Both the position numbers and the translations under genes were made by a program. Under the pieces are notes generated by a model. It saw only the letters and a program-made list of their open reading frames with translations, was not told the DNA's origin and did not search any database. Below, piece by piece: positions 1,317 through 63,368 of a stretch of 64,000 nucleotides of DNA (the stretch's first letter is position 1; the number at the start of each line of letters is the position of its first letter). The stretch lies in IMG/VR virus record IMGVR_UViG_3300023184_004198, positions 1-64,000 of that record. The stretch is one strand, 5' to 3'.

Positions 1317-2465
1317 CTATACTTTGAACCAAGTTAGATATTGTTCTATTTTTTTGGTAACACTGGACCAATCTCCCATTGAAGGTTGACGGAATATCCT
1401 TGTGCTAGGATACCAAGGACTTGAGTCTCGGTCTAACATCCAACGCCAATCTGTGGCAAACCACTGTAACATCAACCAGGTAGGTCTTCCCAGTGCACCT
1501 GCTAGATGTGTAATAGCAGTGTCTACGCTAATCACAACATCCAAACAAGTTATCAATGCCGCAGTGTCAGCAAAACTAGCAATGGCTCCTGGGTACATTG
1601 TGACTCCAGCCGCTGCTAGTGCCTGCGATTCTTCATCAGTGGCATCCACCTGCAGGTTGATCCACTCGTATTGCGGATTGTTTTTGACTAACTCCAGCAT
1701 GGTTTCAAATGGCACGCTTTTGTGTTGATTAAGCCAGGCATCTCTACGTCCCGACCATGAAAATCCAACCCGCATGCGTGTTTTAGGACCCATGCGTTGT
1801 AACCAGGCTTTGACATCAGTTTCTTGTGCATTGATATAACTGATAGGACGCGGCAAATTATCTAAAGTAATTCCCAATACTCCAGGAATACTCATGATAG
1901 GAACCCAATAATCAAACTCGGGCGGTTCATCAGTGTATCTGCCAACCCAGTTAATAATACTAGCATTGGCTAACAAAGGAATCATGCCATCCGTGACTTG
2001 AAACAAAATCTTTGCTCCTGCGGCATGCAAGTTAAACAAAAATCTGCAGAACTGTATATTGTCTCCATGTCCCTGTTCACCTATGACCAATATGGTTTTG
2101 TCTTTTAAATCTTGTCCAGTCCAACGAGGTTGAGCATGTTGTGGCAGCGATCCCGCTAGATGTTCATACTGCCAACGTGCTTCGTAGGCCGGCCATCCAC
2201 GAGCATAATCGCCCATGATCAAATAACTCACAGCCAAGTTAAAACGTGCTGTGACATTGTTGGGATCAAGTATGGCAGCATGTTCTAAAAATGGTATGCC
2301 ACGTCTTGGTTGGCCCATTTCTCTCATGACGTTGCCATAGTTGTTGAATGCTGCCGCAGAATCAGGATCTTGACACATGGCCAAAGTATAACACTGCAAT
2401 GCCTGTGCAGGTTGATTGTTGGCACGATATTGGTTGCCTTCTTCAATGAGTTGTGATGAGTCCAT
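1317..2465 (-). CDS. TPR-repeat protein with C-terminal GT-B (GT9-like) glycosyltransferase domain
   Basis: N-terminal TPRs (AAAFNNYGNVMREMG, ARFNLAVSYL), then ILVIGEQGHGDNIQFCRF, VGFSWSG and LDVVISVDTAITHLAGALGRPTW. Confidence 0.85.
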   Translation of the reverse strand: MDSSQLIEEGNQYRANNQPAQALQCYTLAMCQDPDSAAAFNNYGNVMREMGQPRRGIPFLEHAAILDPNNVTARFNLAVSYLIMGDYARGWPAYEARWQYEHLAGSLPQHAQPRWTGQDLKDKTILVIGEQGHGDNIQFCRFLFNLHAAGAKILFQVTDGMIPLLANASIINWVGRYTDEPPEFDYWVPIMSIPGVLGITLDNLPRPISYINAQETDVKAWLQRMGPKTRMRVGFSWSGRRDAWLNQHKSVPFETMLELVKNNPQYEWINLQVDATDEESQALAAAGVTMYPGAIASFADTAALITCLDVVISVDTAITHLAGALGRPTWLMLQWFATDWRWMLDRDSSPWYPSTRIFRQPSMGDWSSVTKKIEQYLTWFKV

Positions 2466-2469
2466 GAGA

Positions 2470-2475
2470 TATTTA
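2470..2475 (-). promoter_or_regulatory. T4-type late promoter box TAAATA, 4 nt before ATG
   Basis: Minus strand TAAATA-tctc-ATG (ATG at 2465). Confidence 0.7.
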
Positions 2476-2513
2476 CAGTATATACAGTGCGGTTTATTAT
2501 TTTAACTGATCCA

Positions 2514-2519
2514 TAAATA
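2514..2519 (+). promoter_or_regulatory. T4-type late promoter box TAAATA
   Basis: TAAATA upstream of the structured leader and the gene at 2608. Confidence 0.65.
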
Positions 2520-2525
2520 AAAGTC

Positions 2526-3457: not shown

Positions 3458-4045
3458 ATGAGTGCAGCATTTGTATTGGGCAACGGTGTCAGCCGACTGG
3501 CAGTGAATTTAAATCAACTAAAGCAACGTGGAAAAATCTACGGATGTAATGCCTTGTACAGAGAATTTGCACCAGATGTGTTGGTCAGCACAGATCGAGG
3601 TATTGCACAAACTATTCAAAATTCTGGATATGCACAAAACAACACAATGTATACCAGAAAACCCTTGCCGGGACTGGGTGCTCGTACAGTGCCACAAAGT
3701 TATTTTGGTTACAGTTCAGGACCTATTGCAGTGGGGTTGGCTGCATTGGACAAACATCTAGCAGTATACCTCATTGGATTTGACATGGGCCCAATCGGCA
3801 ACAACAAGTTCAACAATGTGTATGCAGACACAGAATTTTATAGAAAAAGCATAAGTTTGCCCACATTTACTGGCAACTGGATCAGACAAATTGCAACCAT
3901 TTGTCGAGACTTCTCGGACACCAGTTTTCATCGCGTCATGGGCGATACCACTGCCAGTATTCCTGAACTAAACAATATTCCTAATTTAAAAAACATGCCC
4001 ATGTCAGACTTGCTTGACCGTATAAATAACACAAAGGACCTTTAA
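3458..4045 (+). CDS. GT42/GT29/Maf-like (sialyltransferase-fold) glycosyltransferase-like protein
   Basis: Motifs FVLGNGVSR...IYGCNALY and YSSGPIAVGLA...VYLIGFDM parallel, from memory, the CstII-type GNGPS...RCNQFY and TSG...IYLSGIDF motifs. Confidence 0.55.
   Translation: MSAAFVLGNGVSRLAVNLNQLKQRGKIYGCNALYREFAPDVLVSTDRGIAQTIQNSGYAQNNTMYTRKPLPGLGARTVPQSYFGYSSGPIAVGLAALDKHLAVYLIGFDMGPIGNNKFNNVYADTEFYRKSISLPTFTGNWIRQIATICRDFSDTSFHRVMGDTTASIPELNNIPNLKNMPMSDLLDRINNTKDL
4021..4028 (+). promoter_or_regulatory. Late promoter TATAAATA
   Basis: Exact T4 late consensus, 17 nt before ATG 4046. Confidence 0.7.
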
Positions 4046-5554
4046 ATGTCAACAGTCAAACGAGTCAGTGGCGACTACACACTAGAAACCATAAATGCAG
4101 GTGATTTAGTCACTCTACAAAGTACCAATGTAAACATTGTGGGCAATCTCACAGTGACAGGCAATGCTGTGTTGACTGGAAATATCAATGCCGACAAAAT
4201 TTTTAACGGCACCAGTAGTGTAGAAATTCCCACAATCAATGGCAATATCACATTCAATCCTGGTGGCGTCAGCAATATCATGGTGGTATCCCCTTCTGGT
4301 ACTACCTTTAGTGGTGTGGTAGCATTTACAGGCAATGTAGACGCAGGTAATCTCAACACCACCGGCGGTGTTTATACTGCCAGTGGTACTGGTGCTGGCA
4401 ATGTTTCAATTGTCAACGGCAACATGTTGATTGCCTACAGTTCTAATACTACCAGCAATCAAAACATTAGATTTCAAGATTCGAACATAGCAGTAACTTC
4501 AGTAGGTGCAAACATTGGTGGCATAGAATGGTTTACATCTGACGCCACAGGCGCTGGCGCTAGAATCACAGCAAGAATTCGTGCAGTGTACGAAGACAGT
4601 GATGGCAACGCTAACATTCAAATTCAAACTGGCAGTACCTCAACTCCCACGACAAGAATCACTGTGATTGGTAGTTCAGGCAATGTAGGTATAGCCAATG
4701 TGGCACCGTTGCATGCGTTAGCGGTAACTGGCACAGTGTATGGCTCTAGCACACTTACCGCAGTGGGTAATATCACCGGCGGCAACATTGTCACAGCAGG
4801 ACTTGTGACTGTGACTGGTAATGTAAATGGTGGAAACTTACAAACTGCAGGATTGATCACAGCCACTGGCAACGTCACTGGTGGTAATGTAATCAGTTTG
4901 GGTGCGTTGAGTGCAGGTGCTGCTGGTATAACTGCAACTGGTAATATTCGCGGCGGTAACATTGTCAGTGATGACCAAATTTCAGCCACTGGTAACGTAA
5001 ACGCTGCCAACTTTAATGCTACACAAAACTTCAGTACCACAGGCAATGTACGCAGTGGCACAGTAACAGCATCTGGAAATATTGTTGGATCCAATATTCA
5101 AATAACCGGCAACAGTTACGGCACGGGTATTGGAGTAGAAAACATTGTATGGCAACCAACCACTGTGGCATTTAACAGTGCTGTACAGGCCAACGTTGGT
5201 ACATTAGGCTTCTTTATGCTGGGTGGTTACACTTACAAATTTGAAGCATACTTGCCTATATTACCTGCTGGTGCTACCACAACTGGTTTCAGTACATATT
5301 TTGATGCAGGAACTTGTTATTACACTGTTGAAGCACAAACCACACAAACTTCGGCATTTAGCACATCGACCTCCAACGTTTCGGGCACAGCCGCAGCCAC
5401 TCAAGGCATGACTGGTACCACACCTAGAACAGCAAGAATCACAGGCACTATTTACAGCGCCGGCAATGCCAATGTTGCTATACAAGCACAAACCAGTGCT
5501 GCAAATATCAACATACAAAGTGGCGCATTCCTGACCTACACTAGATTATCCTAA
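4046..5554 (+). CDS. Tail fibre-like protein with GN(I/V)TGGN repeats
   Basis: 502 aa with a central TAxGN(I/V)TGGN(I/V) repeat block and a globular C-terminus. Confidence 0.7.
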   Translation: MSTVKRVSGDYTLETINAGDLVTLQSTNVNIVGNLTVTGNAVLTGNINADKIFNGTSSVEIPTINGNITFNPGGVSNIMVVSPSGTTFSGVVAFTGNVDAGNLNTTGGVYTASGTGAGNVSIVNGNMLIAYSSNTTSNQNIRFQDSNIAVTSVGANIGGIEWFTSDATGAGARITARIRAVYEDSDGNANIQIQTGSTSTPTTRITVIGSSGNVGIANVAPLHALAVTGTVYGSSTLTAVGNITGGNIVTAGLVTVTGNVNGGNLQTAGLITATGNVTGGNVISLGALSAGAAGITATGNIRGGNIVSDDQISATGNVNAANFNATQNFSTTGNVRSGTVTASGNIVGSNIQITGNSYGTGIGVENIVWQPTTVAFNSAVQANVGTLGFFMLGGYTYKFEAYLPILPAGATTTGFSTYFDAGTCYYTVEAQTTQTSAFSTSTSNVSGTAAATQGMTGTTPRTARITGTIYSAGNANVAIQAQTSAANINIQSGAFLTYTRLS

Positions 5555-5576: not shown

Positions 5577-5582
5577 TAAATA
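5577..5582 (+). promoter_or_regulatory. Late promoter box TAAATA
   Basis: Upstream of SD GAGGA and ATG 5605. Confidence 0.6.
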
Positions 5583-5604
5583 CATCAGAGGACATTGTAG
5601 ATCT

Positions 5605-8600
5605 ATGGCACAACAGATTATTGACATTGGTGCTGCTGCGAATGACGGCACTGGTGAACCATTACGCGATGCATTTAACGCTGTAAATGAAAACTTTACT
5701 GAGATTTATACTGCTGGCCCAGTAGGCAGCAATGTCGTCATCTCCGGTAATACCATCACCGTCACTGGTGTCAACAACAACCTAGTGCTCAAAGCCAATG
5801 GCATTGGCAATATTCAAGCAAATAGTTCAATCATGCCCAGTATTGATGCTGTGTATGACATCGGGGCTCCTACTGCAAGAATTGACACTGTTTATGCTGC
5901 ATATTTTGTAGGCAACGGACAAGGCATTACTGGAATTACCACAGCAGGTACCAGCATAAATTCTGGTACATCCAATGTAAAAATTGTCAGTGCAAACGGC
6001 AATGTAACTGTCAGTGTAAATGGCACATCAAATGTGGCTGTGTTTGGCAGCACTGACTCAAATATCAAAGGAAATCTAGCAGTTGGGAATCTTTCAACTG
6101 CAGGACAAATAACTGCCGCCAGCAATATCACTGGTGGTAATATTAGAACTGTTGGCTCAGTCAGCGCAACAGGCAATATCACAGGCAACTATATTTTAGG
6201 TAATGGTGCATTGTTGTCGGGCATTATTACTTCTGTATCTAACATCAACAACGGCAACAGCAACGTAAACATTCAAAATGCAGGCGCCAATGTTACTGTC
6301 AGTGTAAATGGCATAGCAAACACTGTGGTATTTGGTTCTGCGGCTACTACATTCACTGGTAATATTGTTCCTGGTGCCAACAATGTATACACTTTGGGTA
6401 CTGCTACTCAAAGATTTAAAAACATTTATCTGAGTGGTAACACAATCACTCTTGGTGATTCAACATTTACCGCCAACGCTGATTCTGTTATTTTAACCAA
6501 CCCTGTTGGTGGAACTTTTACCATACAAGGAACCAGTCAACTCAGTGGATCGTCTATTGTAAATGGTCTCAGTCAAATGGCCATTCCTGTGGCCAATGGC
6601 AATGTACAGGTAAGTGTGGGAACCACTGCCAATGCATTGGTGATCAGTGCCACCAACATGCAAAGCATTGGTAACATATTGGCCAACAATCAAATCAGTG
6701 CTGCTGGTAACATTGTGACCAGCGGTTTCTTTGTGGGTAACTTTGTGGGCAATGTCACTGGCAACCTTGTTGTGCCTGGCGTTAACACACAGATTCTTTA
6801 CAACAACTTTGGCAATGCTGGAGCCAGTGCTGCCTTTAGATTTGACAGCACCTCCAATGTGTTAACACTCACAGGTAACGCACAAGTTGGTAACGTTCGT
6901 ACTGTGGGACAAGTCAGTGCCACTGGCAATGTAACTGGCAACTACTTTATTGGTAACGGTTCCTTGTTGACTGGCATTGCTGCCACTTACAGCAATGCCA
7001 ATGTGGCAACATATTTGGCCAGTGGAACCAACACATCAAATATCATTACCACTGCCAATATTGCTGGTGGAAACTTATCTTTAACTGGTGCATTCTCTCC
7101 CAGTTCGTTTAGTTCTGCAGGCAATGTAACTGGTGGCAACCTAAGAACAGCAGGAGTAGTAAGTTCAGCAGGCAACATCATAACTGACGGATACTTTGTT
7201 GGTACGTTTGCTGGCAACATCACAGGCAATTTGACAGTACCTGGATCAAATACACAAGTTATTTTTAACAACGCTGGCAATGCTGGCGCTAGTGCTGGAT
7301 TTAGATTTGACACAGCAGGGCCTAACTTGCTCACAGTCAATGGCAACGTACAGACCATTGGCCTGTTGGCATCTAGCAATGTGTCAGCAGCCGGCAATAT
7401 ATTGGCAAACAATGTTGTCATAACTGGCCTGGTCAGTGCGGTAGGAAGCATATCAACCACAGGCAATATCACTGGCGGAAATATCAACACTGCTGGTCAA
7501 GTCACAGCCACCGCCAATGTAACAGGTGGCAATTTGATCACTGCTGGCACATTGTCTGTGGGCAGTACTGTTAGCGCAACAGGCAATATCACTGGCAGTA
7601 ATATTATTACTACAGGGTCAGTAAGTGCTGGCGGCGATGTCAGTTTACTAGGCAATGTGGATGGCGGCAATATTCGCACTGTTGGGCAAGTCACTGCCAC
7701 AGGTAATATCACCGGCGGCAACATTCTGTTTGGCATATTCAAATTACTTAATAATGGTGATGCACAAGTTGGTAATTTAACTGTCAGCAATGGTCCAGGT
7801 ATTGGCAACCTTCTTGTTGGTAATATTATAAGTGCAACTGGCAACATACTGACCGGCGGTAACGTCAGCGCAACTGCCAACGTTGTTGGCGGTAACTTGC
7901 TGGCTGGATCAGGCGTTATCACCACAACTGGCAACATCACAGGCGGCAATATATTGGCTGGTTCAGGCGTTATTAGTACTGGTGGCAACGTCAATGGAGC
8001 AATATTCAACGGCAATGTGGCATTTGGTACCGGCACAGTGTCGGGCACTGGCAACATCACTGGTGGTAACGTATTAGTTTCAGGTGTGTTGCTATCTACC
8101 AACACAGTTTCAGCAGCCGGTAATGTAATTGGCGGCAACATCAACACAGGTGGAAATATTTCTACTTCAGGCAATGTGATTGCCCAAGACATCAGAGTTG
8201 GTCCAGGCATAACTGGCGGTACCATAAGTGCATTGGGCAATATCACCAGTGCCAACTCATTGAATGCGGTTAGTTTGAGTTTGAGTGGTAATGTTGTATC
8301 ACCACTCAATATCACAGGCAATGTAACTAGTGGCAATATTGTTGCTGTGGCAGCAGTCAATGCTGTTTCAATTAGTGCAAGTGGCAACATCACCGGTGGT
8401 AACATACTTGGCGGAGCCAACGTTAATGCCACAACTCACACAGGTACCACCGTTTCAGTAACTGCTAATATCACAGGCGGTAACTTGAATGCTGCGGGAT
8501 TGAGTCTGAGTGGCAATGTTGTGTCACCACTCAATGTCACAGGTACCGTAACTGGCGGAAATATCATTAGCGTGGCAGCAATGTCAGCAGCCACAATGAC

Positions 8601-21952: not shown

Positions 21953-21956
21953 GGTA

Positions 21957-21964
21957 TATTTATA
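21957..21964 (-). promoter_or_regulatory. Late promoter TATAAATA, 4 nt before ATG
   Basis: Minus strand TATAAATA-tacc-ATG (ATG at 21952). Confidence 0.8.
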
Positions 21965-21990: not shown

Positions 21991-22019
21991 TTGACCAATA
22001 ATGCCGTTTCTGCTATAAT
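21991..22019 (+). promoter_or_regulatory. Sigma70-type early promoter
   Basis: TTGACC-N17-TATAAT with an extended -10 TG, upstream of SD AAGGAG and ATG 22047. Confidence 0.8.
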
Positions 22020-22046
22020 TACGTATAAATTCACTAAGGAGCCCTG

Positions 22047-23999: not shown

Positions 24000-24008
24000 T
24001 GCTATAAT
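24000..24008 (+). promoter_or_regulatory. Extended -10 sigma70 promoter
   Basis: TGcTATAAT, 5 nt before ATG 24014. Confidence 0.6.
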
Positions 24009-24013
24009 GTGGC

Positions 24014-24535
24014 ATGGACTTAATGATCGACATCGAAGGTTTGGCAACAGGCCCTGAGACCACAATATTGACCATTGCGGCACAGGCATTTGACCCTCTT
24101 GGCAAGGGCTACTACGAGCACAAGTATTATGCCCGAGTTGATCTCGAAAGCCAAGAAAATCGCACCATTGAACAAGGCACCATAGACTGGTGGGCCACAC
24201 AACCCGCTGCCGCACGTGACGAAGCCTTCAATGAGGTGGGACGTATTCCCTTGGACCAAGCCCTGGATGAGCTTCATAAACTTTGCTGGAAATGCAATCG
24301 TATCTGGATGAATGGTCCCACATACGATGCCAACATCCTGGAGCATGCCTACAAGAGTTATGGTAAACCACTACCTTGGCAATATTATAAGATCTGTGAT
24401 GCAAGGACGGTATATAAGCTGTATCCAGGGTTGCCCAAGCCGCCTACCAGTCATCATGCGCTGGAAGACTGCCGCAGACAAATTGACTTGTTACAAGCAA
24501 CCTTGGCACATTTAAACATCAAAGAACTGGCATGA
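24014..24535 (+). CDS. DEDDh 3'-5' exonuclease (DUF5051/DexA-like)
   Basis: MIDIEGL...WMNGPTYD...HHALEDCRRQ catalytic pattern. Confidence 0.85.
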   Translation: MDLMIDIEGLATGPETTILTIAAQAFDPLGKGYYEHKYYARVDLESQENRTIEQGTIDWWATQPAAARDEAFNEVGRIPLDQALDELHKLCWKCNRIWMNGPTYDANILEHAYKSYGKPLPWQYYKICDARTVYKLYPGLPKPPTSHHALEDCRRQIDLLQATLAHLNIKELA

Positions 24536-25489: not shown

Positions 25490-25493
25490 GGAG

Positions 25494-25499
25494 TATTTA
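25494..25499 (-). promoter_or_regulatory. Late promoter box TAAATA, 4 nt before ATG
   Basis: Minus strand TAAATA-ctcc-ATG (ATG at 25489). Confidence 0.7.
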
Positions 25500-25560: not shown

Positions 25561-25585
25561 TCAATAACTTGAAAAGGAACCAACC

Positions 25586-38687: not shown

Positions 38688-38692
38688 TTAAT

Positions 38693-39500: not shown

Positions 39501-39514
39501 ACCGTAAATACGGT
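39501..39514 (+). promoter_or_regulatory. Late promoter box TAAATA within an inverted repeat, 4 nt before ATG
   Basis: ACCGT-AAAT-ACGGT then ATG 39515; TAAATA at 39505-39510. Confidence 0.7.
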
Positions 39515-43077: not shown

Positions 43078-44647
43078 AAATTTAGAAACAGTGCTGGTCA
43101 AGGCACCGCACCGCAAAGAAGTATACACAGAAGATGAACTTGTAGAGTTTGCAAAGTGCGCTGATCCTGTTACTGGCCCGTTGTATTTCATGGATAACTT
43201 TTTCTTTATTCAGCATCCCACACGCGGCAAGATGTTGTATCATCCATTTGAGTATCAAAAGCGACTGATTGCTACATATCACAACTACCGATATTCAATA
43301 TCCTTGATGCCTCGACAAACAGGCAAGTCAACGTCGGCCGCTGGTTACTTGTTGTGGTACGCAATGTTTGTGCCAGATTCAACCATCCTTGTGGCTGCAC
43401 ACAAATACACAGGCGCACAAGAGATCATGCAACGTATTAGATACGCATATGAACTGTGCCCTAATCATATCCGAGCAGGTGCTACCAGTTACAACAAGAA
43501 TTCATTGGAATTTGAAAACGGATCACGTATTGTAGCGCAGACCACAACAGAAACAACAGGACGGGGTATGAGTATTTCACTCTTGTACGCTGATGAGTTT
43601 GCATTTGTGCGACCCACTATTGCTAGAGAGTTTTGGACTTCTATTTCACCTACCTTGGCCACAGGTGGTAAGGCTATTATTACAAGTACTCCCAACTCGG
43701 ACGAAGATCAATTCGCATACCTGTGGAAAGGTGCCAACAAGACCATGGACGAACATGGCAACACCACTGAACTGGGCATCAATGGGTTCCGTGCATTTAG
43801 AAGCAACTGGCGTGAGCACCCTGACAGAGATGAGCAGTGGGGACTAGAGCAACTAGCACAGTTGGGTGAAGATCGATTTCGTAGAGAAATGGAATGTGAA
43901 TTTGTTATCAACGACGAAACACTAATTGCTCCTACCAAACTCTTGGACCTGGAAGGCATAGAGCCTCAGCGCAGAACTGGCCAAGTGCGTTGGTACAAAA
44001 CTCCAGTCAAAGACAAAATATACATCGTGGCGTTGGATCCTAGTTTAGGCACTGGTGGTGATCCTGCTGCCATACAGGTATTTGAAGCAGATACCACAGA
44101 ACAAGTGGCTGAATGGCGGCACAATCGCACAGACATTCCCACACAAGTAAAACTGCTGGCAGACATTGTAAAAGAGTTATACGATATCACAAAAGACGAC
44201 AAAAAGATCTATTACAGTGTGGAAAACAATACCATTGGCGAAGCTGCCTTGATAAGCATAAACGAGTATGGGGAAGAAAACATACGAGGATATTTTTTGA
44301 GCGATAACAGTGTAACAGGCACAACTGGGCGTAGATTCCGCAAAGGATTCAACACCACAAACAAAGCCAAGCTCACTGCCTGCAACAAGTTCAAAATTTT
44401 AGTGGAATCAGGACGCATGAAACTGTATAGCAGACCCTTGATTTCGGAACTCAAAACTTTTGTTGCCCATGCCGGTAGTTATGCTGCTAAACCTGGGGAA
44501 ACGGACGATCTTGTAATGGGTTCACTGTTGGCAGTGCGCATGCTGATGATGTTGCAAACATATCATGCAGAATTGGATTCGCACATGAAAGATCATGGCG
44601 ACAATATCATAGAACCTATGCCTTTTATAGTTAGTATGGCACGCTAA
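43058..44647 (+). CDS. gp17: Terminase large subunit
   Basis: PRQTGKS Walker A, LLYADEFAF Walker B, ITSTPN, ALDPSLG and HDD-type ETDDLVM nuclease motif. Confidence 0.95.
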   Translation: MIAPPSKNLETVLVKAPHRKEVYTEDELVEFAKCADPVTGPLYFMDNFFFIQHPTRGKMLYHPFEYQKRLIATYHNYRYSISLMPRQTGKSTSAAGYLLWYAMFVPDSTILVAAHKYTGAQEIMQRIRYAYELCPNHIRAGATSYNKNSLEFENGSRIVAQTTTETTGRGMSISLLYADEFAFVRPTIAREFWTSISPTLATGGKAIITSTPNSDEDQFAYLWKGANKTMDEHGNTTELGINGFRAFRSNWREHPDRDEQWGLEQLAQLGEDRFRREMECEFVINDETLIAPTKLLDLEGIEPQRRTGQVRWYKTPVKDKIYIVALDPSLGTGGDPAAIQVFEADTTEQVAEWRHNRTDIPTQVKLLADIVKELYDITKDDKKIYYSVENNTIGEAALISINEYGEENIRGYFLSDNSVTGTTGRRFRKGFNTTNKAKLTACNKFKILVESGRMKLYSRPLISELKTFVAHAGSYAAKPGETDDLVMGSLLAVRMLMMLQTYHAELDSHMKDHGDNIIEPMPFIVSMAR

Positions 44648-44650
44648 ATA
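44645..44650 (+). promoter_or_regulatory. Late promoter box TAAATA
   Basis: Overlaps the gp17 stop codon, 7 nt before ATG 44658. Confidence 0.6.
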
Positions 44651-44657
44651 CACAACT

Positions 44658-47297
44658 ATGACAATGGAAGCATTACCTCAAGATCTAGCAGATTTCTTGG
44701 TCACACGCAATTTTGACCCAGAATATTTCAACAAAAAAGGCGATCCCTCAGAAGCCAGCGAAGCCACTACCATGAAATTTGACTATGTTGCTGGTTCGGG
44801 CAAAAACTATGGCACAGCAGTATGTGTGATTGCTGATGATGAGCTCAGTTTGTTCTACGGAGACAATCTGGGCCGTGGCATGGAACCCGAAGACAAACAA
44901 GAGTGGTTTGACTTCTTAGAACAACTCAGCAACACTGCTGCCAGCCATGGTGCAACATGGAGTCCTACAGAAATCAACAAACTCAAACACACCTTGGCTG
45001 GTATTGCTGCTATCAAAGAAGGGTTGTTTGAAGGCTACTACGGCAATCGCAAGGTCAGTTACATGGGCGAACAAACTCAAGCTCGCTTGGTAATCAACCA
45101 CAATCGTGTGCTGGGCGAAAACGACAAGCGTTATCGCTATGTGGAAAGCCTGTATATTGAAACAGCAGATCAAGAACGTTTTCGACTGCCATTCAAAAGT
45201 CTAGCAGCCGGCAGAGCCATGCTGGAACATGTACGTCAAGGCGGACGTCCTTACGACATTCGTGGCAATCACATCACAGAGATAGTGAGCGAAATGGCTG
45301 TGCTCAGTCGTTTCAACCGTGCGCAACACCATCGTGTGTACGAAGGTGTCACACAAGAACTTGTGGAAAGCGCACAGCAATACTATCATAACCTACAAGA
45401 AACCATGAAGCATCTTGGCAGCCCACGCGGCTATCGAGCATACTTTGAAAGCTGGGCTCCTGACCAAGTTGGTGAAGCCGAAGCCCTAGTAGAAAATCTA
45501 CGCGACCTGTTTGTAGAACAAACATTGGATGCTAGAATTGAAGCTGCCTTGCCCACACTGGCCAAGATACAAAAACAAGGAAACAACATGAAAGAAGCGC
45601 AAATATTTGAAAACTGGGTCAACCAGTTGAGCGAAGGAACTTGGGCATTGCCAGAAACTCCTGAGCAAATGGAAAAACTCAACCAACTCATGAGTGGCGA
45701 ACTTATTGTTGGTCCAGATGCCACCAATGCCACAGAGCAGTTGTATGACATTGTGGGCGATGATGAACTGTTTGATATTTTGAACGACTTGGCTGACCGT
45801 AGTGAAGGTCGCGCCAATGTTTGGGACGACTCAGATGTACAACGCAGACTGGCTGAACTGGGCATTCAAACCCCTCAGAGCACACAAGCAGAACCTGCTG
45901 ACGTTGAACAAGACACAGCACCCCCAATGATGGAAACTCGCGAAATCCGTAACAAAAAAGGCAGATTACTAGGAACATGGGATGGTCGCGTGTTCACCAT
46001 GGATCCTGAAACAGAACAAATATGGGCTGAAGAAAATGGTCCAGAATGGGTTGAAGATTTTAAAGCCAAAAAAACAGCAGAACTACAACAGCAATCAGCG
46101 CCATCTGAAGACATGATCAAATACTATGCCAACGAATTGGAAAAATATGATGTCCAGGCTGGCCAACCAAGACAGTCTAGACAACAGTATTATGATCTAG
46201 CGGCACAGATGGTATCAGGTGCCCTGGCGGAAGGCGAAGAAGCAGACAACCCCAAGTACAGCATGTCTAACCCAGGAAAACTCAGCAATGACGAATACAA
46301 AGATAGTTTGAATCGTCGATACGGTCAACCTGATTTGGATACTTCAAAGTTCAACAAGTCACATCAAGATTACTATGATCGGAACCCCAGTTTCAAACAA
46401 AGCGGAAAAGAAATTGTCAGTCCTGGTGACGGACGTCTTGCTTCAAAAGTTGTGCCAGCAGTGACTGATACAAACGTAGGTCGTATCCCAATGAACACAC
46501 CCGGTGGTAGTGCCATGCGCGGAGGTGGAGGTATGGGCGGAGGCACAGGACTCGGTGGTAGAAAACCAGGAGATGACTGGAGACTCAATATGCTGAAATT
46601 AGAGAACGCCGACTTGGCCCGCATGTTACAACATGCTGGCGTACCACTGCAAGAAGGTGTGCTGACTGATTCAACAGGCAGCACACTGGAACACATCAAA
46701 GACACATACAAGCGTGACGTCAAAGACTTCATGCAAACTGGCGAAATGAGTCGTCATTTGGAGCAAGTATTGTATGATTATTACTATGACGATATGCCAT
46801 ATGGCGCGAAAACTGGTGAAGACATAGATACATCTGAATGGATCAGTGATCGTTTTGCCGAAGATCTTGGCATGAATGAAAACCTAATCACCCCAATGAT
46901 CATGCCAGTAAGCGAAGGATCATGCAACATGACCATGGAAGGTTCTTACTGCCCAGAACACGGCCTGGCTGAATGTGGTGGCATGTATGAAGATGAGTAC
47001 ATACCACGTGTTGAAATCCGTGGTTTTGGTCCTGATTTTGAAGACCTTCCAGCAGGAAAAAAACTAATCAATCCAATGCAGCCACGTGTCCATAATGCGC
47101 TGTCTCCACTCACACCTGGAGACAGTAGTCCAATGCCTCCAGTGGCCAATGTTGACTTGACAGTGGATGAAGGCAACGATGATCCAATCAATTCAAACTC
47201 CGCCATTACTGGAAGTTATTATGAGGGCAAGGAATACCAATCTCAAGAAGGCGATGCACTTTTGGCAAGAATAAAATCACTGGCTTTGCTCAAATGA
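44658..47297 (+). CDS. Large acidic late protein, probably head-internal and modular
   Basis: 879 aa with a globular N-terminal third, then modules bounded by hydrophobic-x-Glu sites. Ends LLARIKSLALLK. Confidence 0.5.
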   Translation: MTMEALPQDLADFLVTRNFDPEYFNKKGDPSEASEATTMKFDYVAGSGKNYGTAVCVIADDELSLFYGDNLGRGMEPEDKQEWFDFLEQLSNTAASHGATWSPTEINKLKHTLAGIAAIKEGLFEGYYGNRKVSYMGEQTQARLVINHNRVLGENDKRYRYVESLYIETADQERFRLPFKSLAAGRAMLEHVRQGGRPYDIRGNHITEIVSEMAVLSRFNRAQHHRVYEGVTQELVESAQQYYHNLQETMKHLGSPRGYRAYFESWAPDQVGEAEALVENLRDLFVEQTLDARIEAALPTLAKIQKQGNNMKEAQIFENWVNQLSEGTWALPETPEQMEKLNQLMSGELIVGPDATNATEQLYDIVGDDELFDILNDLADRSEGRANVWDDSDVQRRLAELGIQTPQSTQAEPADVEQDTAPPMMETREIRNKKGRLLGTWDGRVFTMDPETEQIWAEENGPEWVEDFKAKKTAELQQQSAPSEDMIKYYANELEKYDVQAGQPRQSRQQYYDLAAQMVSGALAEGEEADNPKYSMSNPGKLSNDEYKDSLNRRYGQPDLDTSKFNKSHQDYYDRNPSFKQSGKEIVSPGDGRLASKVVPAVTDTNVGRIPMNTPGGSAMRGGGGMGGGTGLGGRKPGDDWRLNMLKLENADLARMLQHAGVPLQEGVLTDSTGSTLEHIKDTYKRDVKDFMQTGEMSRHLEQVLYDYYYDDMPYGAKTGEDIDTSEWISDRFAEDLGMNENLITPMIMPVSEGSCNMTMEGSYCPEHGLAECGGMYEDEYIPRVEIRGFGPDFEDLPAGKKLINPMQPRVHNALSPLTPGDSSPMPPVANVDLTVDEGNDDPINSNSAITGSYYEGKEYQSQEGDALLARIKSLALLK

Positions 47298-55675: not shown

Positions 55676-55789
55676 ATGACCAATCAAGAACGCTGGCAAA
55701 GAGATTTGGAAGAAATAGAATTCTTTTTGCTAATATTCTTCATTGAAGCCTGGACAGCTTTTTGGTGGTGCATGAGTCATGTCAGTTAA
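55676..55789 (+). CDS. 37-aa putative single-pass membrane protein (not in the ORF track)
   Basis: MTNQERWQRDLEEIEFFLLIFFIEAWTAFWWCMSHVS exactly fills the gap between uvsY and the next late box. Confidence 0.45.
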   Translation: MTNQERWQRDLEEIEFFLLIFFIEAWTAFWWCMSHVS

Positions 55790-55792
55790 ATA
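55787..55792 (+). promoter_or_regulatory. Late promoter box TAAATA, 5 nt before ATG
   Basis: TAAATA-ttcac-ATG (ATG at 55798). Confidence 0.7.
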
Positions 55793-55797
55793 TTCAC

Positions 55798-56562
55798 ATG
55801 AAAATTGTAATAGTCACAGGTGGATTTGATCCACTACATTCTGGGCACATTGCTTATTTTGAAGCAGCCCGAGCCCTGGGCGATAGACTAGTGGTTGGTA
55901 TCAACTCCGATGCGTGGCTCACACGCAAAAAAGGTCGCCCATTCATGCCCATGGCAGAACGGCGTGCCATCATTGAAAATCTACGCATGGTAGACAAAGT
56001 AATTGAGTTTGATGACGCTGATAACACAGCCATAGATGCTATACGTGTTGCTCGTACATATTATACCATGCCCAGATCCCAATTTATATTTGCCAATGGC
56101 GGTGATCGCACAGCAGACAACATACCAGAAATGGTGTTTGATGATGTAGACTTCCAATTTGGTGTAGGTGGCGAAAACAAAATGAATTCAAGTTCATGGA
56201 TACTTATAGAATGGAAGACACCGCGAACTGATCGAGCCTGGGGATATTATCGTGTGCTACACGAAGTAGGCGCCAATACCAAACTCAAAGAACTCACTGT
56301 GATGCCCAAACAATGTTTGAGCATGCAACGCCATGACAGTCGTGCAGAATTTTGGTTTGTGGCTGAGGGAGAAGCCACTGTGTATACTTTGGATCAAGCC
56401 AGCACCGACCAGGAAGTCAAATGCAGTCTTGTCATGCACGAACACACTTTTATCAACATCAATGAATGGCATCAACTGTGTAATGAAACTGATCAACCAC
56501 TAAAGTTGATTGAAATACAATACGGCGACCGTTGTGTTGAGGAAGATATCGAACGCAGATGA
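55798..56562 (+). CDS. HIGH-family cytidylyltransferase fused to a mannose-6-phosphate isomerase type II-like cupin
   Basis: TGGFDPLHSGH...VVGINSD...FANGGDR, followed by RAWGYYRVL...LSMQRHDSRAEFWFV...HQLCN...LIEIQYG. Confidence 0.85.
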   Translation: MKIVIVTGGFDPLHSGHIAYFEAARALGDRLVVGINSDAWLTRKKGRPFMPMAERRAIIENLRMVDKVIEFDDADNTAIDAIRVARTYYTMPRSQFIFANGGDRTADNIPEMVFDDVDFQFGVGGENKMNSSSWILIEWKTPRTDRAWGYYRVLHEVGANTKLKELTVMPKQCLSMQRHDSRAEFWFVAEGEATVYTLDQASTDQEVKCSLVMHEHTFININEWHQLCNETDQPLKLIEIQYGDRCVEEDIERR

Positions 56563-60500: not shown

Positions 60501-61141
60501 GTGTATATCCAATCAGATTCGTTCAGTGTATCAACATGTGTGTAACCCAAGGATGCCAGTAAGTCTTTGGTTTTTTGATTGATGTTGTCTCCAAATCTAT
60601 TCAGATATTTACTTGGAGGTGGATCCCACATTTCAATGGCTATAACTGGTTTGAATTTTTTGATAGTAGACACAGCGCCGCTGAGAGCAAAATATTCATA
60701 GCCTTCTATATCCAAGTGTATCAAATCACATGCTGTCAATCCCAAATTATCTATCAAATAGATTGGATAAATCCCATCACCGTTGATAAAACTTTTTCCT
60801 CTACTTTTGGATTTGATATGAAGATCGACCAATCCAGGATCACTACCAAGACATCCTTGAGATTTAACTATATTTCCTTCAGGGCAATTCATTGCTAAAC
60901 AATAGAAATTTAGCCAGTCTGGTTCAAAAGTATAAACAGCATTAAAAATTTTTGAATATTGTTTTGGATACATACCGCAGTTGCCGCCAGCTTGCACCAC
61001 AACTTTTTTGTCATCAACGTAACTGGATATTCGGCCAGGCAAATCAAAATTTTCTAATAAAAATTTCCAAGTATTGGTATCATCTTTTGGCCAATACCAT
61101 CCTTCTTTAATTTCTACTAGATCAAGTGCAGTTATGGCCAC
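60485..61141 (-). CDS. FkbM-family methyltransferase
   Basis: VVQAGGNCG...VYTFEPD...LIHLDIEGYE...KPVIAIE. Confidence 0.85.
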   Translation of the reverse strand: MAITALDLVEIKEGWYWPKDDTNTWKFLLENFDLPGRISSYVDDKKVVVQAGGNCGMYPKQYSKIFNAVYTFEPDWLNFYCLAMNCPEGNIVKSQGCLGSDPGLVDLHIKSKSRGKSFINGDGIYPIYLIDNLGLTACDLIHLDIEGYEYFALSGAVSTIKKFKPVIAIEMWDPPPSKYLNRFGDNINQKTKDLLASLGYTHVDTLNESDWIYTCEQK

Positions 61142-61782
61142 CCCATGATCCAGTCGTCACGTATTTGCTCCAGTTTGATCATGCCCCAGGCTTGCAATAA
61201 TTCTACTGCTGCAAACTGACCGTATTGCTTGCTGTAAGCATCATGTGGTTTTTGTTCTATCACTATCACAGGTCTACAACGGCGAATGGTTTGTTCAGCG
61301 CCTTGCAAGATACGATACTCGTATCCCTCGCAGTCAATTTTGATATAACTGACATCATGAAAATTCAATGTATCCAGTCGAACAACTTGCACATCGCCAG
61401 TGCCCATGGTAGCAGGATCTAGATGGCTGTGCCCAGAATTTTTCTCCGTGATGATCATGGTTCCTTGTGTGTCTTGATCACCTAAGGCAATTGGCTGAAC
61501 TTCAAAGTTCGTGCCTCGCACATTTTGTTCCAGGCATTCTCTAAACAAGGCCACTGGTTCAAATGCTATCACACGAGCAAAACTGCCAACAAAGTCACGA
61601 CTCCACAAGCCCACATTGGCACCAATGTCTAGGGCCAGGTCTCGTTTTTTGCACAGTTCAATGCTTCGACGTCGCACAGCAACTTGATATTCAGCCGGGA
61701 GACCTTTGTCTACACTTTTCCTTAACATCTTTGGAAGATGTGTTTCAAAGTCCGGGAATTTCCATCCATAATGCTCAACCAT
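61132..61782 (-). CDS. FkbM-family methyltransferase
   Basis: LDIGANVG...VIAFEP...IKIDCEGYE...RPVIVIE. Confidence 0.9.
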   Translation of the reverse strand: MVEHYGWKFPDFETHLPKMLRKSVDKGLPAEYQVAVRRRSIELCKKRDLALDIGANVGLWSRDFVGSFARVIAFEPVALFRECLEQNVRGTNFEVQPIALGDQDTQGTMIITEKNSGHSHLDPATMGTGDVQVVRLDTLNFHDVSYIKIDCEGYEYRILQGAEQTIRRCRPVIVIEQKPHDAYSKQYGQFAAVELLQAWGMIKLEQIRDDWIMGWP

Positions 61783-62578
61783 TTAATATCTCCTCAGTTT
61801 GTTTAATTATACGTTCTGCTGAACCGTTCTTGAATTCGTCTATGTGAAACTGCGCATAGGCCAAATGATACGCCCAGGCCAACACTTGATCTCGATCTGG
61901 AAACCATGGATTGTCTATGTGAGTCAAGTCTGTGTTGCTGACAGGTTTGGCAGCATTTGACGGTGCTAATGCAAACACAGGCACACCTGCTAAGATGGCT
62001 TCTGTGCCTGCTATTGAGTTGAATGTTACTACAGCATGTACATCATCCAAGGCTTTTTCCACACGATTGGTTTTTCTGTCTGTTCGACTTCGATTGCGTT
62101 CACGGATCACAATGGGCCTATCAGTGTGTTGTTTGATAGTGGCAACGGTTTCTGCCAACCAAGTATCCAGCTCTATGTCGTAAAACTTACAAGGCTTTTC
62201 ATCTGGAGCAACAATCAGTATTGTGCTGCCGCGTCGACGATTGGCTGCTTCTAATCCCAGTTGGTTCCAACGATCACTGGGCCGCGGTATGACTTGATCA
62301 TGTTGCAAATTGTTGGGCACTATTCTATGCCAGTGTTTCCATCCATGCGGATTTTTGAAACTGGGACGATTGCCCAAGTAACCTGAGTCCATGTATCTAA
62401 ATGGTCTGTTATCTGCCCAGCACTGTTTGATGATTTTGTGCTTCATTATGCCACGTAGCATGAGTGGCTCTGTGCTGTCCTCGTAACGCCATGACTCCAA
62501 TGGAGTAGACTCAACACCAAGTCCATGTGCATACATGTCGATGTATTCGTCATCACCATTCTTGCTCAAAAATATCAT
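61775..62578 (-). CDS. Capsule_synth/KpsS-like GT-B protein (paralog 3)
   Basis: RYMDSGYL...ILIVAP...IVIRER...VVTFNSIAGTEAILAGVPVF...LAYAQFH. Confidence 0.55.
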   Translation of the reverse strand: MIFLSKNGDDEYIDMYAHGLGVESTPLESWRYEDSTEPLMLRGIMKHKIIKQCWADNRPFRYMDSGYLGNRPSFKNPHGWKHWHRIVPNNLQHDQVIPRPSDRWNQLGLEAANRRRGSTILIVAPDEKPCKFYDIELDTWLAETVATIKQHTDRPIVIRERNRSRTDRKTNRVEKALDDVHAVVTFNSIAGTEAILAGVPVFALAPSNAAKPVSNTDLTHIDNPWFPDRDQVLAWAYHLAYAQFHIDEFKNGSAERIIKQTEEILNG

Positions 62579-63357
62579 CGCCAGTATGTTTCTTTTCTTG
62601 GTGCCACTAGATCTGACAAGTTGCTGCGGCCACTGCCTTTGCGTTTGCCTTTAAGATGATCAATATATCCTCCCCAATCACAGTTGATCAAGGGGTGACC
62701 CTCGCCCATTTGCAAGTGTGCTGTCCAATTGAGTTCTGCCAGTCCACTGCGAGCTTTTACCGCATCAAACACAAAACTGTCGTGCCATTCTTTCAGAGTA
62801 AAGATGCCATTCTCAGCGTCATCATACATGCGTTGAAACTCTGCCAAGAACTTTTGCACAGGTTCTCTGGTTAGATTCATACCGTATAGGCCACATTCAC
62901 TGAATTTGTTACTGCGACCTGCATAACACAGTTCACGATCTGCAGGAAAGAACTGATCCAATCGTTGCACAGTGATTGGTGAGTGGCATACCATGTCAGC
63001 GTCCATCCAAATCAACCAGTCTGTTTGGGCATGTTTGGCAGCATGAAATATAGCATACACTTTGTGACTGAATCTCACTGCTTGCCATTTGAATGATTTA
63101 CGTTCGCTACCAGGGCCATTATCGCCATTGGCCTTGGGCACGTTGCGCCATTTGTTTTTGAATGCCACAAGATCAGCACTTGCCCCTTCCAAGTCCAACA
63201 CTTGTAAATTGGGCGCTGATGTTTTAACACGACACCCTTCGGCGTATACTCGGAGCATGACATCCCGGGGCCATGTTTGTAAAAAAGTGTCAATCATGCG
63301 CCGACCGTAGGTATTGTAACCGTCGGCATTAAAAGTGGTAACTACAGTGTATTTCAT
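62575..63357 (-). CDS. GT-A glycosyltransferase-like protein
   Basis: VVTTFN...RFSHKVYAI...LIWMDAD...SECGLYGMN...WHDSFVFD...DHLKG. ATG 63357 lies 5 nt after TAAATA. Confidence 0.75.
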   Translation of the reverse strand: MKYTVVTTFNADGYNTYGRRMIDTFLQTWPRDVMLRVYAEGCRVKTSAPNLQVLDLEGASADLVAFKNKWRNVPKANGDNGPGSERKSFKWQAVRFSHKVYAIFHAAKHAQTDWLIWMDADMVCHSPITVQRLDQFFPADRELCYAGRSNKFSECGLYGMNLTREPVQKFLAEFQRMYDDAENGIFTLKEWHDSFVFDAVKARSGLAELNWTAHLQMGEGHPLINCDWGGYIDHLKGKRKGSGRSNLSDLVAPRKETYWR

Positions 63358-63362
63358 AAGCG

Positions 63363-63368
63363 TATTTA
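63363..63368 (-). promoter_or_regulatory. Late promoter box TAAATA, 5 nt before ATG
   Basis: Minus strand TAAATA-cgctt-ATG (ATG at 63357). Confidence 0.7.

What the first reader, a model, noticed from the sequence alone, without database searches (positions are those of the whole stretch)
2465..63368. Late boxes sit 4-5 nt before ATG at eight genes: probable leaderless late mRNAs
Seen: TAAATA-N4-ATG at 2465(-), 21952(-), 25489(-), 31614 and 39515; TAAATA-N5-ATG at 38693, 55798 and 63357(-). N7 spacing occurs at 30812 and 44658, and a sigma70 TGcTATAAT-N5-ATG at 24014. There is no room for an SD between box and ATG. Established: T4 late transcripts start a few nt downstream of TATAAATA. Inference: these mRNAs start at or next to the AUG. 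High-demand genes (capsid, sheath, tube, gp32) keep an SD, suggesting a two-tier translational programme and a host tolerant of leaderless translation.
Basis: partly seen in the sequence, partly recalled or inferred. Interest (0 to 1): 0.7.

Follow-up and report, generated by a model that had tools for sequence, protein, structure and literature searches.

The report
Late promoter boxes abutting start codons
In this uncultured freshwater jumbo phage and its close relatives, about half of the T4-like late promoter boxes, and some ordinary sigma-70 promoters, sit so close to the start codon that the mRNA should begin at or within three bases of the AUG; this probable leaderless design is conserved in dozens of relatives but absent from T4 and the cultured cousins tested.

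Summary
Across the 212-kb phage record, the distance from TAAATA to an ORF-opening ATG is bimodal: 25 sites at N4-N8, 2 at N9-N16 and 26 at N17-N26. The N17-N26 class carries a Shine-Dalgarno (SD) leader. The same pattern appears in four related genomes (pooled gap P = 2e-17).

Both classes share the same flanks and have no -35 element. Nine of 25 short sites head divergent transcription units. Spacing at short sites is conserved within one base: 12/12, 78/80 and 57/57 relatives at three window genes.

An internal calibrator agrees. Canonical TTGACC-N17-TATAAT promoters abut ATGs at N6, the known sigma-70 start offset.

T4, PA5oct, Vibrio phage 2.275.O, Serratia phage BF and Sinorhizobium phage Phosso lack the short class.

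Two caveats apply. No transcription start site could be mapped, because metatranscriptome contigs were uninformative. The gp55-like late sigma gene is not on this truncated contig, but it lies 14-18 kb upstream of the capsid gene in all six related records checked.

Verdict: probable leaderless or near-leaderless late (and some early) mRNAs. This is a new variant of known kinds and is not shown experimentally.

The parts
2463..2475 (-). TAAATA-N4-ATG at the head of the leftward gene 1317-2465 (382 aa, phrog_36377, function unknown). It is divergent from 2608-3408(+).
   Evidence: All 12 relatives (52-69% aa identity) keep the box at N4 or N5 while the flanks have diverged. The upstream neighbour lies on the opposite strand, 142 nt away.
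21950..21962 (-). TAAATA-N4-ATG (here the full TATAAATA) at the head of the leftward unit 20612-21952 (virion structural protein, phrog_11591). It is divergent from an early sigma-70 promoter serving 22047(+).
   Evidence: Orthologues: G003 N7; G001 N20 and G002 N21, which are in the leadered spacing class but without a clear SD.
25487..25499 (-). TAAATA-N4-ATG for the 114-aa HNH-like gene 25145-25489. It is divergent from the sheath gene.
   Evidence: Conserved as C3 N4, G002 N5 and G003 N5.
31604..31616 (+). TAAATA-N4-ATG for the 173-aa gene 31614-32135, inside a 14-nt intergenic gap.
   Evidence: 76 of 80 relatives have N4 and 2 have N5. G002 has switched to N20 with an AAGGAG leader.
39505..39517 (+). 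TAAATA-N4-ATG for the radical-SAM gene 39515-40654.
   Evidence: C3 orthologue has N4.
38682..38695 (+). TAAATA-N5-ATG for the nuclease gene 38693-39499 (phrog_14168, aligned from residue 1).
   Evidence: No exact TAAATA box in C3 or G001, so this is a weaker site.
55787..55800 (+). TAAATA-N5-ATG for the 254-aa gene 55798-56562 (heptose kinase/adenylyltransferase-like).
   Evidence: C3 N5 and G003 N5.
63355..63368 (-). TAAATA-N5-ATG at the head of the leftward six-gene unit 59132-63357.
   Evidence: No box in C3 or G003, so this is a weaker site.
44645..44660 (+). TAAATA-N7-ATG for the 879-aa virion protein gene. The TAA of the box is the stop codon of the terminase large-subunit gene 42995-44647.
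   Evidence: All 57 relatives have exactly N7, with an A conserved at the 5th base after the box. Predicted leader is 3 nt.
30799..30814 (+). TAAATA-N7-ATG before 30812-31171.
   Evidence: No box in C3, G002 or G003. Possibly a chance match or a lineage-specific site.
24000..24016 (+). Extended -10 TGcTATAAT, then N5, then the ATG of the exonuclease-like gene 24014-24535. This is a probable leaderless sigma-70 transcript.
   Evidence: Orthologues: G003 TTGACA-N17-TATACT-N6-ATG; C3 TAGACA-N17-TACAAT-N6-ATG.
25555..25588 (+). Contrast class: TAAATA-N25-ATG with an AAAGGAA leader before the tail sheath gene 25586-28882.
28920..28950 (+). Contrast class: TAAATA-N22-ATG with an AGGAG leader before the tail tube gene 28948-29574.
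4023..4048 (+). Contrast class: TATAAATA-N17-ATG with an AAGGA leader before 4046-5554.
   Evidence: N17 in 3/3 relatives.
5577..5607 (+). Contrast class: TAAATA-N22-ATG with an AGAGGA leader before the 1755-aa gene 5605-10872.
   Evidence: Spacing varies from N18 to N24 in 9 relatives.
21991..22049 (+). Early-type promoter TTGACC-N17-TATAAT with an AAGGAGCC leader before 22047-23180. It shows that this phage uses canonical sigma-70 promoters and SD sites.
   Evidence: The same cassette recurs at about 65, 145 and 148-149 kb of the record.

Best explanation
TAAATA, usually with C three bases before it and a pyrimidine after it, and with no -35 partner, is the -10-type late promoter of this jumbo phage. 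A phage gp55-family sigma factor bound to host RNA polymerase core presumably reads it. Transcription starts at the 5th or 6th base after the box, preferring an A that follows a pyrimidine. In one class of sites (N17-N26) this gives a short leader in which the Shine-Dalgarno sequence begins 3-4 nt after the start. In the other class (N4-N8, about half of the sites) the first transcribed base is the A of the AUG (N4, N5), or lies one to three bases before it (N6-N8). These mRNAs are therefore leaderless or nearly so. They must be translated by the SD-independent route in which the ribosome recognises a 5'-terminal AUG. A handful of canonical sigma-70 promoters in the same genomes are placed the same way (-10, N6, ATG), so early genes use this route too. 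What is shown: the motif, the two spacing classes, their conservation, the lack of SD, the genomic contexts, and the absence of the short class in T4 and cultured relatives. What is inferred: the start site, the sigma that reads the box, late timing, and the mode of translation.
For: Spacing distribution:
- It is bimodal with an empty N9-N16 zone in G000, in G001-G003 and in C3. Pooled counts are 89/28/131, gap P = 2e-17, and the pattern is specific to TAAATA among its 15 permutations.

Both classes look like the same promoter:
- They share the same flanks: C at -3 in 15/25 and 14/27 sites; G after the box in only 1/25 and 1/27.
- There is no upstream element; the maximum information content is 0.10 bit.

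Translation signals:
- Anti-SD pairing has a median of -0.7 kcal/mol for the short class, -5.6 for the long class and -2.4 for random sequence.
- A pyrimidine precedes the ATG in 15/15 N4-N5 sites.

Position of the start site:
- In leadered sites A rises to 0.54/0.49/0.59 at positions 5-7 after the box, Y4-A5 is the commonest dinucleotide, and SD G residues begin at positions 8-9.
- 12/14 N7 sites have A at position 5, and 57/57 orthologues of 44658 keep it.
- The T4 box spans -13 to -6, so +1 is the 6th base after it (PMC2988020).

Conservation of spacing:
- 12/12 relatives have N4-5, 78/80 have N4-5 and 57/57 have N7. A leadered site drifts between N18 and N24.
- Orthologues switch between the short class and the N20-21 spacing class, with a clear SD in some cases. 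Only one case fell between the classes: N11 at the 85121 orthologue in G002.

Genomic context:
- 9/25 short sites head divergent units, against 10/27 long sites.
- Two back-to-back N4 boxes fill a 36-nt divergent gap at 211323-211358.
- Terminator-box-N4-ATG arrangements occur at the 85121 and 195757 orthologues.

Calibrator:
- TTGACC-N17-TATAAT-N6-ATG occurs at 123982 and 137494, with a TATAAT-to-ATG peak at N6.

Sigma factor and literature:
- A late sigma (phrog_12791, to which T4 gp55 also matches) lies 14-18 kb upstream of the capsid gene in 6/6 related records.
- ATAAATA was already predicted as the late promoter, with a gp55-like sigma, in phage CBB (PMC5259590).
Against: - No transcription start site is known for this phage or any close relative. 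Metatranscriptome contigs cover only the capsid gene and are fragmentary.
- The late sigma gene is not in the 212-kb record. The capsid gene sits at the contig's first bases, so the sigma is presumed to lie off the end.
- By strict T4 numbering an N4 site would start at the U of AUG. The model therefore needs a start one base closer than in T4.
- Twelve of the 25 short sites lie 6-17 nt behind a same-strand gene. They could also be translated from read-through transcripts by coupling.
- Many other genes of this phage also lack a strong SD (37% at or below -4.5 kcal/mol with crude start calls), so a missing SD is not unique to this class.
- Three of the listed window sites are not conserved.
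- Start-codon usage does not discriminate: 90% ATG in both classes.
Confidence: 0.7

Rival explanations
1. The boxes are late promoters, but the ATG-adjacent genes are mainly translated from longer read-through transcripts, by termination-reinitiation coupling or by SD-independent, S1-dependent initiation. The transcript from the adjacent box either starts inside the ORF or contributes little. The close spacing would then reflect genome compaction.
For: 12/25 short sites lie 6-17 nt behind a same-strand gene. At 44645 the box contains the upstream stop codon. RNA contigs bridge the sheath-tube junction. Many genes lack a strong SD.
Against: 9/25 short sites head divergent units and have no same-strand gene upstream. 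One pair shares a 36-nt gap. Some sites follow intrinsic terminators. T4 and PA5oct are equally compact, yet their late-box distances do not peak at N4-N8; the T4 octamer is never closer than N13. Compaction does not predict an empty N9-N16 zone, one-base conservation of spacing, or the conserved A at position 5.
Confidence: 0.14
2. When it lies 4-8 nt before an ATG, TAAATA acts on the RNA as an A/U-rich ribosome-binding or enhancer element occupying the usual SD position. It would not be acting as a promoter there.
For: The N4-N8 window coincides with the usual SD-to-AUG spacing. A/U-rich S1-binding enhancers are known (general knowledge).
Against: The hexamer has the same DNA flanks as in the leadered class, where it lies upstream of a true SD. 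Other A4T2 hexamers are not enriched at N4-N8. Canonical sigma-70 -10 boxes with proper -35 partners show the same behaviour at their own offset, N6, which an RNA element does not explain.
Confidence: 0.06
3. The motif marks an endoribonuclease processing site that trims longer transcripts to AUG-proximal 5' ends.
For: Primer-extension 5' ends cannot tell initiation from processing; this caution is raised for T4 in PMC2988020.
Against: The motif has the sequence and position of the T4-family late promoter. It heads divergent units and follows terminators. No candidate nuclease was linked to it.
Confidence: 0.03
4. The pattern is a chance or compositional artefact of an A/T-rich upstream bias.
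For: The N5 count in the window alone is only marginal: 5 of 100 shuffles reach 3.
Against: Searches show strong enrichment, motif specificity, replication in five genomes and deep conservation.
Confidence: 0.01

Closest known systems
Phage T4 late promoters (TATAAATA read by gp55, with gp33 and the gp45 clamp)
   Same: An A/T box at the -10 position, no -35 element, placement before structural genes on either strand, and a gp55-family sigma encoded near the SbcCD-like genes upstream of the head genes in relatives.
   Different: Only the hexamer core is conserved here, with C at -3. The clade's sigma ORF is about 300-325 aa against 185 aa in T4. No gp45-type clamp was found. In T4 the octamer is never closer than N13 to an ORF-opening ATG and the mode is N28. 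Here half of the boxes sit at N4-N8.
Predicted ATAAATA late promoter of Rak2-like jumbo phages (CBB, GAP32) and the PA5oct group
   Same: The same broad phage group (capsid 62-66% identical). The same motif lies before structural genes, with a gp55-like sigma (PMC5259590).
   Different: Those papers describe no leaderless arrangement. PA5oct, Vibrio phage 2.275.O, Serratia phage BF and Sinorhizobium phage Phosso show no N4-N8 enrichment.
Leaderless mRNAs of bacteria and phages (lambda cI from PRM; mycobacterial and mycobacteriophage transcripts)
   Same: The promoter's -10 element is placed so that +1 is the A of the AUG, there is no SD, and translation starts from a 5'-terminal AUG (general knowledge; PMC4633059 for mycobacteria).
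   Different: Here the arrangement is tied to a phage-specific -10-only late promoter. It serves about half of the recognisable late units in a jumbo myovirus whose other genes use strong SD sites. No start site has been measured.

Membership tests
T4-type (gp55-dependent) late promoter | Conserved A/T box of the TATAAATA type upstream of late/structural genes | tested here: met
   TAAATA lies before the sheath, tube and virion protein genes and is enriched and motif-specific. The full octamer is not enriched.
T4-type (gp55-dependent) late promoter | No -35 element | tested here: met
   In 80 sites the maximum information content is 0.10 bit from -45 to -6. Only C at -3 stands out (49%).
T4-type (gp55-dependent) late promoter | Phage encodes a gp55-family sigma factor | tested here: inconclusive
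   It was not found in the 212-kb record. That record starts at the capsid gene and is estimated 61% complete. It is present 14-18 kb upstream of the capsid gene in 6/6 related records, including one whose capsid is 96% identical.
T4-type (gp55-dependent) late promoter | Dependence on the gp33 co-activator and gp45 sliding clamp | tested here: inconclusive
   phrog_223 (gp45) is absent from G000 and G006 and gives a weak match in G001 (E = 5.9e-4). gp33 was not searched. The CBB authors also found neither.
T4-type (gp55-dependent) late promoter | Transcription starts about 6 nt after the box | not testable with these tools
   Only Logan contigs of metatranscriptomes were available and no start sites could be read from them. 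Indirect evidence: A enrichment at positions 5-7, and A conserved at position 5.
Leaderless mRNA | The 5' end of the transcript is at, or within a few nt of, the AUG | not testable with these tools
   Inferred from promoter geometry only. The sigma-70 calibrator at N6 supports the geometry argument.
Leaderless mRNA | No Shine-Dalgarno sequence before the start codon | tested here: met
   Median anti-SD duplex energy is -0.7 kcal/mol, and 4% of sites are at or below -4.5. The leadered class has -5.6 and 68%.
Leaderless mRNA | The adjacent ATG is the true start codon | tested here: met
   PHROG alignments begin at residues 1-5. The first codons are conserved in orthologues.
Sigma-70 promoter giving a leaderless transcript (site 24014) | -35 and -10 hexamers at 17-bp spacing, with the ATG at the 7th base after the -10 | tested here: met
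   The window copy has an extended -10 and N5. Orthologues have TTGACA-N17-TATACT-N6-ATG and TAGACA-N17-TACAAT-N6-ATG.

The most novel reading that the evidence does not exclude
A widespread, uncultured freshwater lineage of Rak2/PA5oct-like jumbo phages has rebuilt roughly half of its late transcription units, and several early ones, as leaderless mRNAs. Its cultured relatives tested here do not show this. That would imply either a host whose ribosomes favour 5'-terminal AUGs, or a phage-driven shift of the translation apparatus late in infection that separates enzymes and minor virion proteins (leaderless) from bulk structural proteins (SD-led). These phages do encode a ribosomal protein bS21 behind a late box.
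Probability: 0.15. Interest if true: 0.8.

Novelty: new variant of a known kind. Interest (0 to 1): 0.58.

Why it matters
If transcripts really start at the AUG, this phage clade would be a natural case in which one promoter type feeds two translation-initiation routes within one infection programme. Orthologous genes switch between the routes during evolution. That would make three questions testable:
- How start-site selection by a gp55-type sigma is set.
- How well the unknown host translates leaderless mRNA.
- Whether phages use leader architecture to set protein stoichiometry or timing.

There is also a practical point for annotation. Gene callers that rely on SD models mis-place starts at such sites. 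Here the longest-ORF call was wrong at 55798 and 63357, and at 32138 it fell on an ATG overlapping a box while the orthologue-supported start is the SD-led ATG at 32156. The box-to-ATG rule could be used to find starts and promoters in the many metagenomic relatives.

Tried and rejected
1. Direct RNA evidence. Two run searches found only metatranscriptomes kept as assembled contigs. Laid on 1-6000 and 25700-31699, they covered the capsid gene heavily, from many micro-diverse relatives, and almost nothing else. No start positions emerged.
2. Late sigma in the phage's own record. phrog_234, phrog_12791 and the PA5oct sigma protein all gave nothing. It was also not within 10 kb upstream of the capsid in 80 related loci. 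It was found further upstream in larger related records.
3. Start-codon usage as a test of leaderless translation. ATG makes up 90% of starts in both classes, so the test is uninformative.
4. A link between phage-encoded ribosomal protein bS21 and the short class. It is rejected as a discriminator because PA5oct and Vibrio phage 2.275.O also encode bS21 but lack the short class.
5. Host inference from MAG bins that hold related capsid genes. The labels are inconsistent: Haliscomenobacter, Thiotrichaceae, Polynucleobacter, Legionellales, Chitinophagales and others. A Bacteroidota host fits poorly with the canonical TTGACC/TATAAT promoters and AAGGAG sites of the early genes, so no host is claimed.
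6. Literature. No paper in the held library links gp55-type late promoters or jumbo phages of this group to leaderless mRNAs. phiKZ showed none, and AR9 has long leaders.
7. Pfam gp32 (PF08804) found nothing. The SSB was identified by PHROG instead.

Full report
**What the window is.** The 64-kb window is the first part of a 212,614-bp IMG/VR virus record. The record is 44.6% G+C, linear, and estimated 61% complete. It is a jumbo myovirus found in lake and other freshwater metagenomes. Its major capsid protein (57-1253) is 62-66% identical to those of Vibrio phage 2.275.O, Pseudomonas phage PA5oct, Sinorhizobium phage Phosso and the Serratia/Erwinia/Yersinia Rak2-like phages.

Genes identified in the window:
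- sheath: 25586-28882
- tube: 28948-29574
- terminase large subunit: 42995-44647
- gp32-like SSB: 47438-48433
- UvsX-like recombinase: 51730-52785
- several radical-SAM proteins and virion proteins

**The observation.**
- TAAATA-N4-ATG occurs five times against 0.68 expected, and none of 100 shuffles reached five.
- The N5 form occurs three times against 0.68 expected.
- The T4 octamer TATAAATA is not the recurring element: it occurs three times and is not enriched.

I measured the distance from each TAAATA to the next ATG that opens an ORF of at least 60 aa, on both strands of the whole record. The distribution is bimodal: 9, 6, 4, 4, 2 sites at N4-N8, two sites in all of N9-N16, and 26 sites at N17-N26. 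The reversed sequence gives 0-1 per bin. Of the 15 hexamers with the same composition, only TAAATA and its one-base shifts behave this way.

**Replication.** I fetched three related metagenomic phage records whole:
- G001: 303 kb, 37% G+C
- G002: 223 kb
- G003: 175 kb

I also fetched a 148-kb contig, C3. It is collinear with the window at 67-85% nucleotide identity and has a capsid protein 96% identical. All four show the same two peaks and the same gap. Pooled counts are 89 short, 28 in the gap and 131 long. The probability of so empty a gap under a uniform distribution is 2e-17.

**Both classes look like one promoter type.**
- They share C at -3 (15/25 and 14/27) and a pyrimidine, almost never G, right after the box.
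- Nothing is conserved further upstream; the maximum is 0.10 bit over 40 positions in 80 sites. This is the signature of the -10-only late promoters of T4 (PMC2988020).
- The long class carries a true SD. Median pairing energy with the anti-SD is -5.6 kcal/mol, and 68% of sites are at or below -4.5. The short class has less pairing than random sequence (-0.7 against -2.4).
- Nine of the 25 short sites head divergent transcription units, as do 10 of the 27 long sites. In the window these are 2465(-), 21952(-), 25489(-) and 63357(-).
- Outside the window, two boxes lie back to back in a 36-nt divergent gap (211323-211358), each four bases from its own ATG.
- In relatives, the orthologues of 85121 and 195757 have an intrinsic terminator, then the box, then N4, then the ATG.

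**Where would transcription start?** The T4 box spans -13 to -6, so +1 is the sixth base after it. In the leadered class of the two 45%-G+C genomes:
- A rises from about 0.25 at positions 1-3 to 0.54, 0.49 and 0.59 at positions 5-7.
- The commonest dinucleotide is pyrimidine-4/A-5.
- The G residues of the SD begin at positions 8-9.

All 15 N4 and N5 sites of the record have a pyrimidine just before the ATG. Twelve of 14 N7 sites have an A at position 5. These points agree on a start at the fifth or sixth base after the box. That base is the A of the AUG at N4 and N5 sites. It leaves 1-3 nt of leader at N6-N8.

The empty N9-N16 zone is what this model predicts. Such leaders are too long for 5'-terminal AUG recognition and too short to hold an SD at working distance.

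**An internal calibrator.** The same genomes hold canonical sigma-70 promoters, for example TTGACC-N17-TATAAT with AAGGAGCC leaders. Distances from TATAAT or TATACT to ORF-opening ATGs peak at exactly N6: nine sites in G001, four in G002 and several in G000. Many of these sites have a proper -35 at 17 bp, such as 123982 and 137494 in G000. N6 puts the A of the ATG at the seventh base after the -10. By general knowledge of sigma-70 promoters, that is the canonical sigma-70 start.

Its orthologues read TTGACA-N17-TATACT-N6-ATG (G003) and TAGACA-N17-TACAAT-N6-ATG (C3). So two different promoter types each abut ATGs at their own expected start offset. This is hard to explain by an RNA-level role for the box.

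**Conservation.**
- Gene 1317-2465(-): all 12 relatives with 52-69% protein identity keep the box at N4 (3) or N5 (9), while the surrounding intergenic sequence has diverged.
- Gene 31614: 76 of 80 relatives (66-93% identity) have N4 and two have N5.
- Gene 44658: all 57 relatives have exactly N7, with the spacer ending in ACT. The TAA of the box serves as the stop codon of the terminase gene.
- By contrast, the leadered site before 5605 drifts between N18 and N24.
- Orthologues also switch class. 31614 is N20 with AAGGAG in G002. 21952 is N7 in G003 and N20-21 in G001 and G002. 44658 is N21 in G002. Only one orthologue fell in the forbidden zone (N11, the 85121 orthologue in G002).
- Three listed sites (38693, 63357(-), 30812) have no exact box at the orthologous start in the relatives examined and should be regarded as weaker.

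**Negative controls.**
- T4: the octamer is never closer than N13 to an ORF-opening ATG and the mode is N28. TAAATA-N4-ATG does not occur at all.
- PA5oct and Vibrio phage 2.275.O: no N4-N8 peak and no N6 peak for TATAAT.
- Serratia phage BF and Sinorhizobium phage Phosso: no enrichment of the short pattern.

So the short class is not a by-product of compact phage genomes or of the promoter family as such. It is a property of this freshwater lineage.

**The sigma factor.** T4 gp55 matches PHROG families 234 and 12791. Neither family, nor the PA5oct late sigma, finds anything in the 212-kb record. In PA5oct the gene lies about 15 kb upstream of the capsid gene, next to the SbcCD-like genes. In all five large related virus records, and in C3, a 299-325-aa phrog_12791 ORF lies 14-18 kb upstream of the capsid gene. 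The capsid gene is at bases 57-1253 of this record. The sigma gene is therefore most likely just off the contig's end, but that is an inference. A gp45-type clamp was not found.

**Which genes use which route.**
- Short-class genes: three radical-SAM proteins, two metallophosphoesterases, a nuclease, an HNH protein, a peptidase, a spanin-like protein, a heptose-kinase-like protein, four minor virion proteins and several unknowns.
- Sigma-70 short-class genes: a primase, an endonuclease and an exonuclease.
- SD-led genes: capsid, sheath, tube and SSB.

**What is missing.** No primary 5' end was seen. The available metatranscriptomes are stored as short contigs. They cover the capsid gene at high depth, from many related strains, and hardly anything else. 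Late timing is inferred from gene content and from the prediction made for phage CBB. The PA5oct transcriptome paper reports only sigma-70-type promoters. I found no paper in the held library that connects this promoter family or this phage group with leaderless mRNAs.

**Verdict.** The leaderless interpretation is the best explanation (about 0.7), resting on geometry, statistics and comparative evidence rather than on measurement. The main rival is that these genes are mostly expressed from read-through transcripts by coupling. It remains possible for the sites that lie inside same-strand gene runs. It does not account for the divergent heads, the terminator-preceded sites, the spacing gap, the one-base conservation or the sigma-70 parallel.

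The elements themselves are known kinds: a T4-family late promoter and leaderless mRNA. Their systematic combination, conserved in one clade and absent from T4 and the cultured relatives tested, is a new variant.

Noticed in passing
G000 (same record, outside the window): 75499, 123982, 137494, 171389; window 24003: Canonical sigma-70 promoters, some with TTGACC at 17 bp, whose -10 hexamer lies 5-6 nt before the ATG of primase-, endonuclease-, dioxygenase-like and exonuclease genes. These are probable leaderless early transcripts. The same N6 peak occurs in G001 and G002.
   Followed up: partly
G000:C1:211320-211361 (outside the window): Two TAAATA boxes lie back to back in a 36-nt divergent intergenic gap. 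Each is exactly four bases from its own ATG.
   Followed up: partly
G000:C1:111080-111304 (outside the window): A 74-aa ribosomal protein bS21 homologue (Pfam PF01165, 70 bits) lies behind a late box at N24. It is also present in G001, G003, PA5oct and Vibrio phage 2.275.O, but not in T4 or Serratia phage BF. It therefore does not track the short-spacing class.
   Followed up: partly
window 39515-40654, 41166-42317, 49040-50017, 54057-55235; G000 133281-134639, 210336-211322: At least six radical-SAM domain proteins are encoded in one phage record. Three of them lie behind N4-N6 boxes. Their function is unknown.
   Followed up: no
window 44645-44650: The TAA of this box is the stop codon of the terminase large-subunit gene. 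The hexamer and the N7 spacing to the next gene are identical in 57 of 57 relatives.
   Followed up: yes
window 32133-32158: The longest ORF starts at an ATG that overlaps the box (TAAATATG, 32138). Orthologues in G002 and G003 support the ATG at 32156 instead, at N17 with an AGGA-type leader.
   Followed up: partly
L178/L179 (NZ_JBBAKG010000003.1 and ...001.1): A 6.9-Mb RefSeq MAG labelled Haliscomenobacter sp. holds two large jumbo-phage contigs (148 and 183 kb) whose capsid proteins are 96% and 89% identical to this phage's. Other relatives sit in MAGs with many unrelated labels. These bins are not reliable host evidence.
   Followed up: partly
window 57-1253: Capsid-gene transcripts from many closely related variants are abundant in freshwater and estuary metatranscriptomes, with summed word depth in the thousands. 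This suggests an active and micro-diverse phage lineage in nature.
   Followed up: no
window 36763-37134 and 37628-38014; G000 204075: Three small genes begin with nearly the same seven codons (MRAQEF then V or I). This suggests a paralogous family of small proteins.
   Followed up: no
window 47298-47437: A full TATAAATA lies about 130 nt upstream of the SSB gene. It is followed by a TTGACA-type element and a long leader with AAGGAG, so the SSB gene may be served by more than one promoter class.
   Followed up: no
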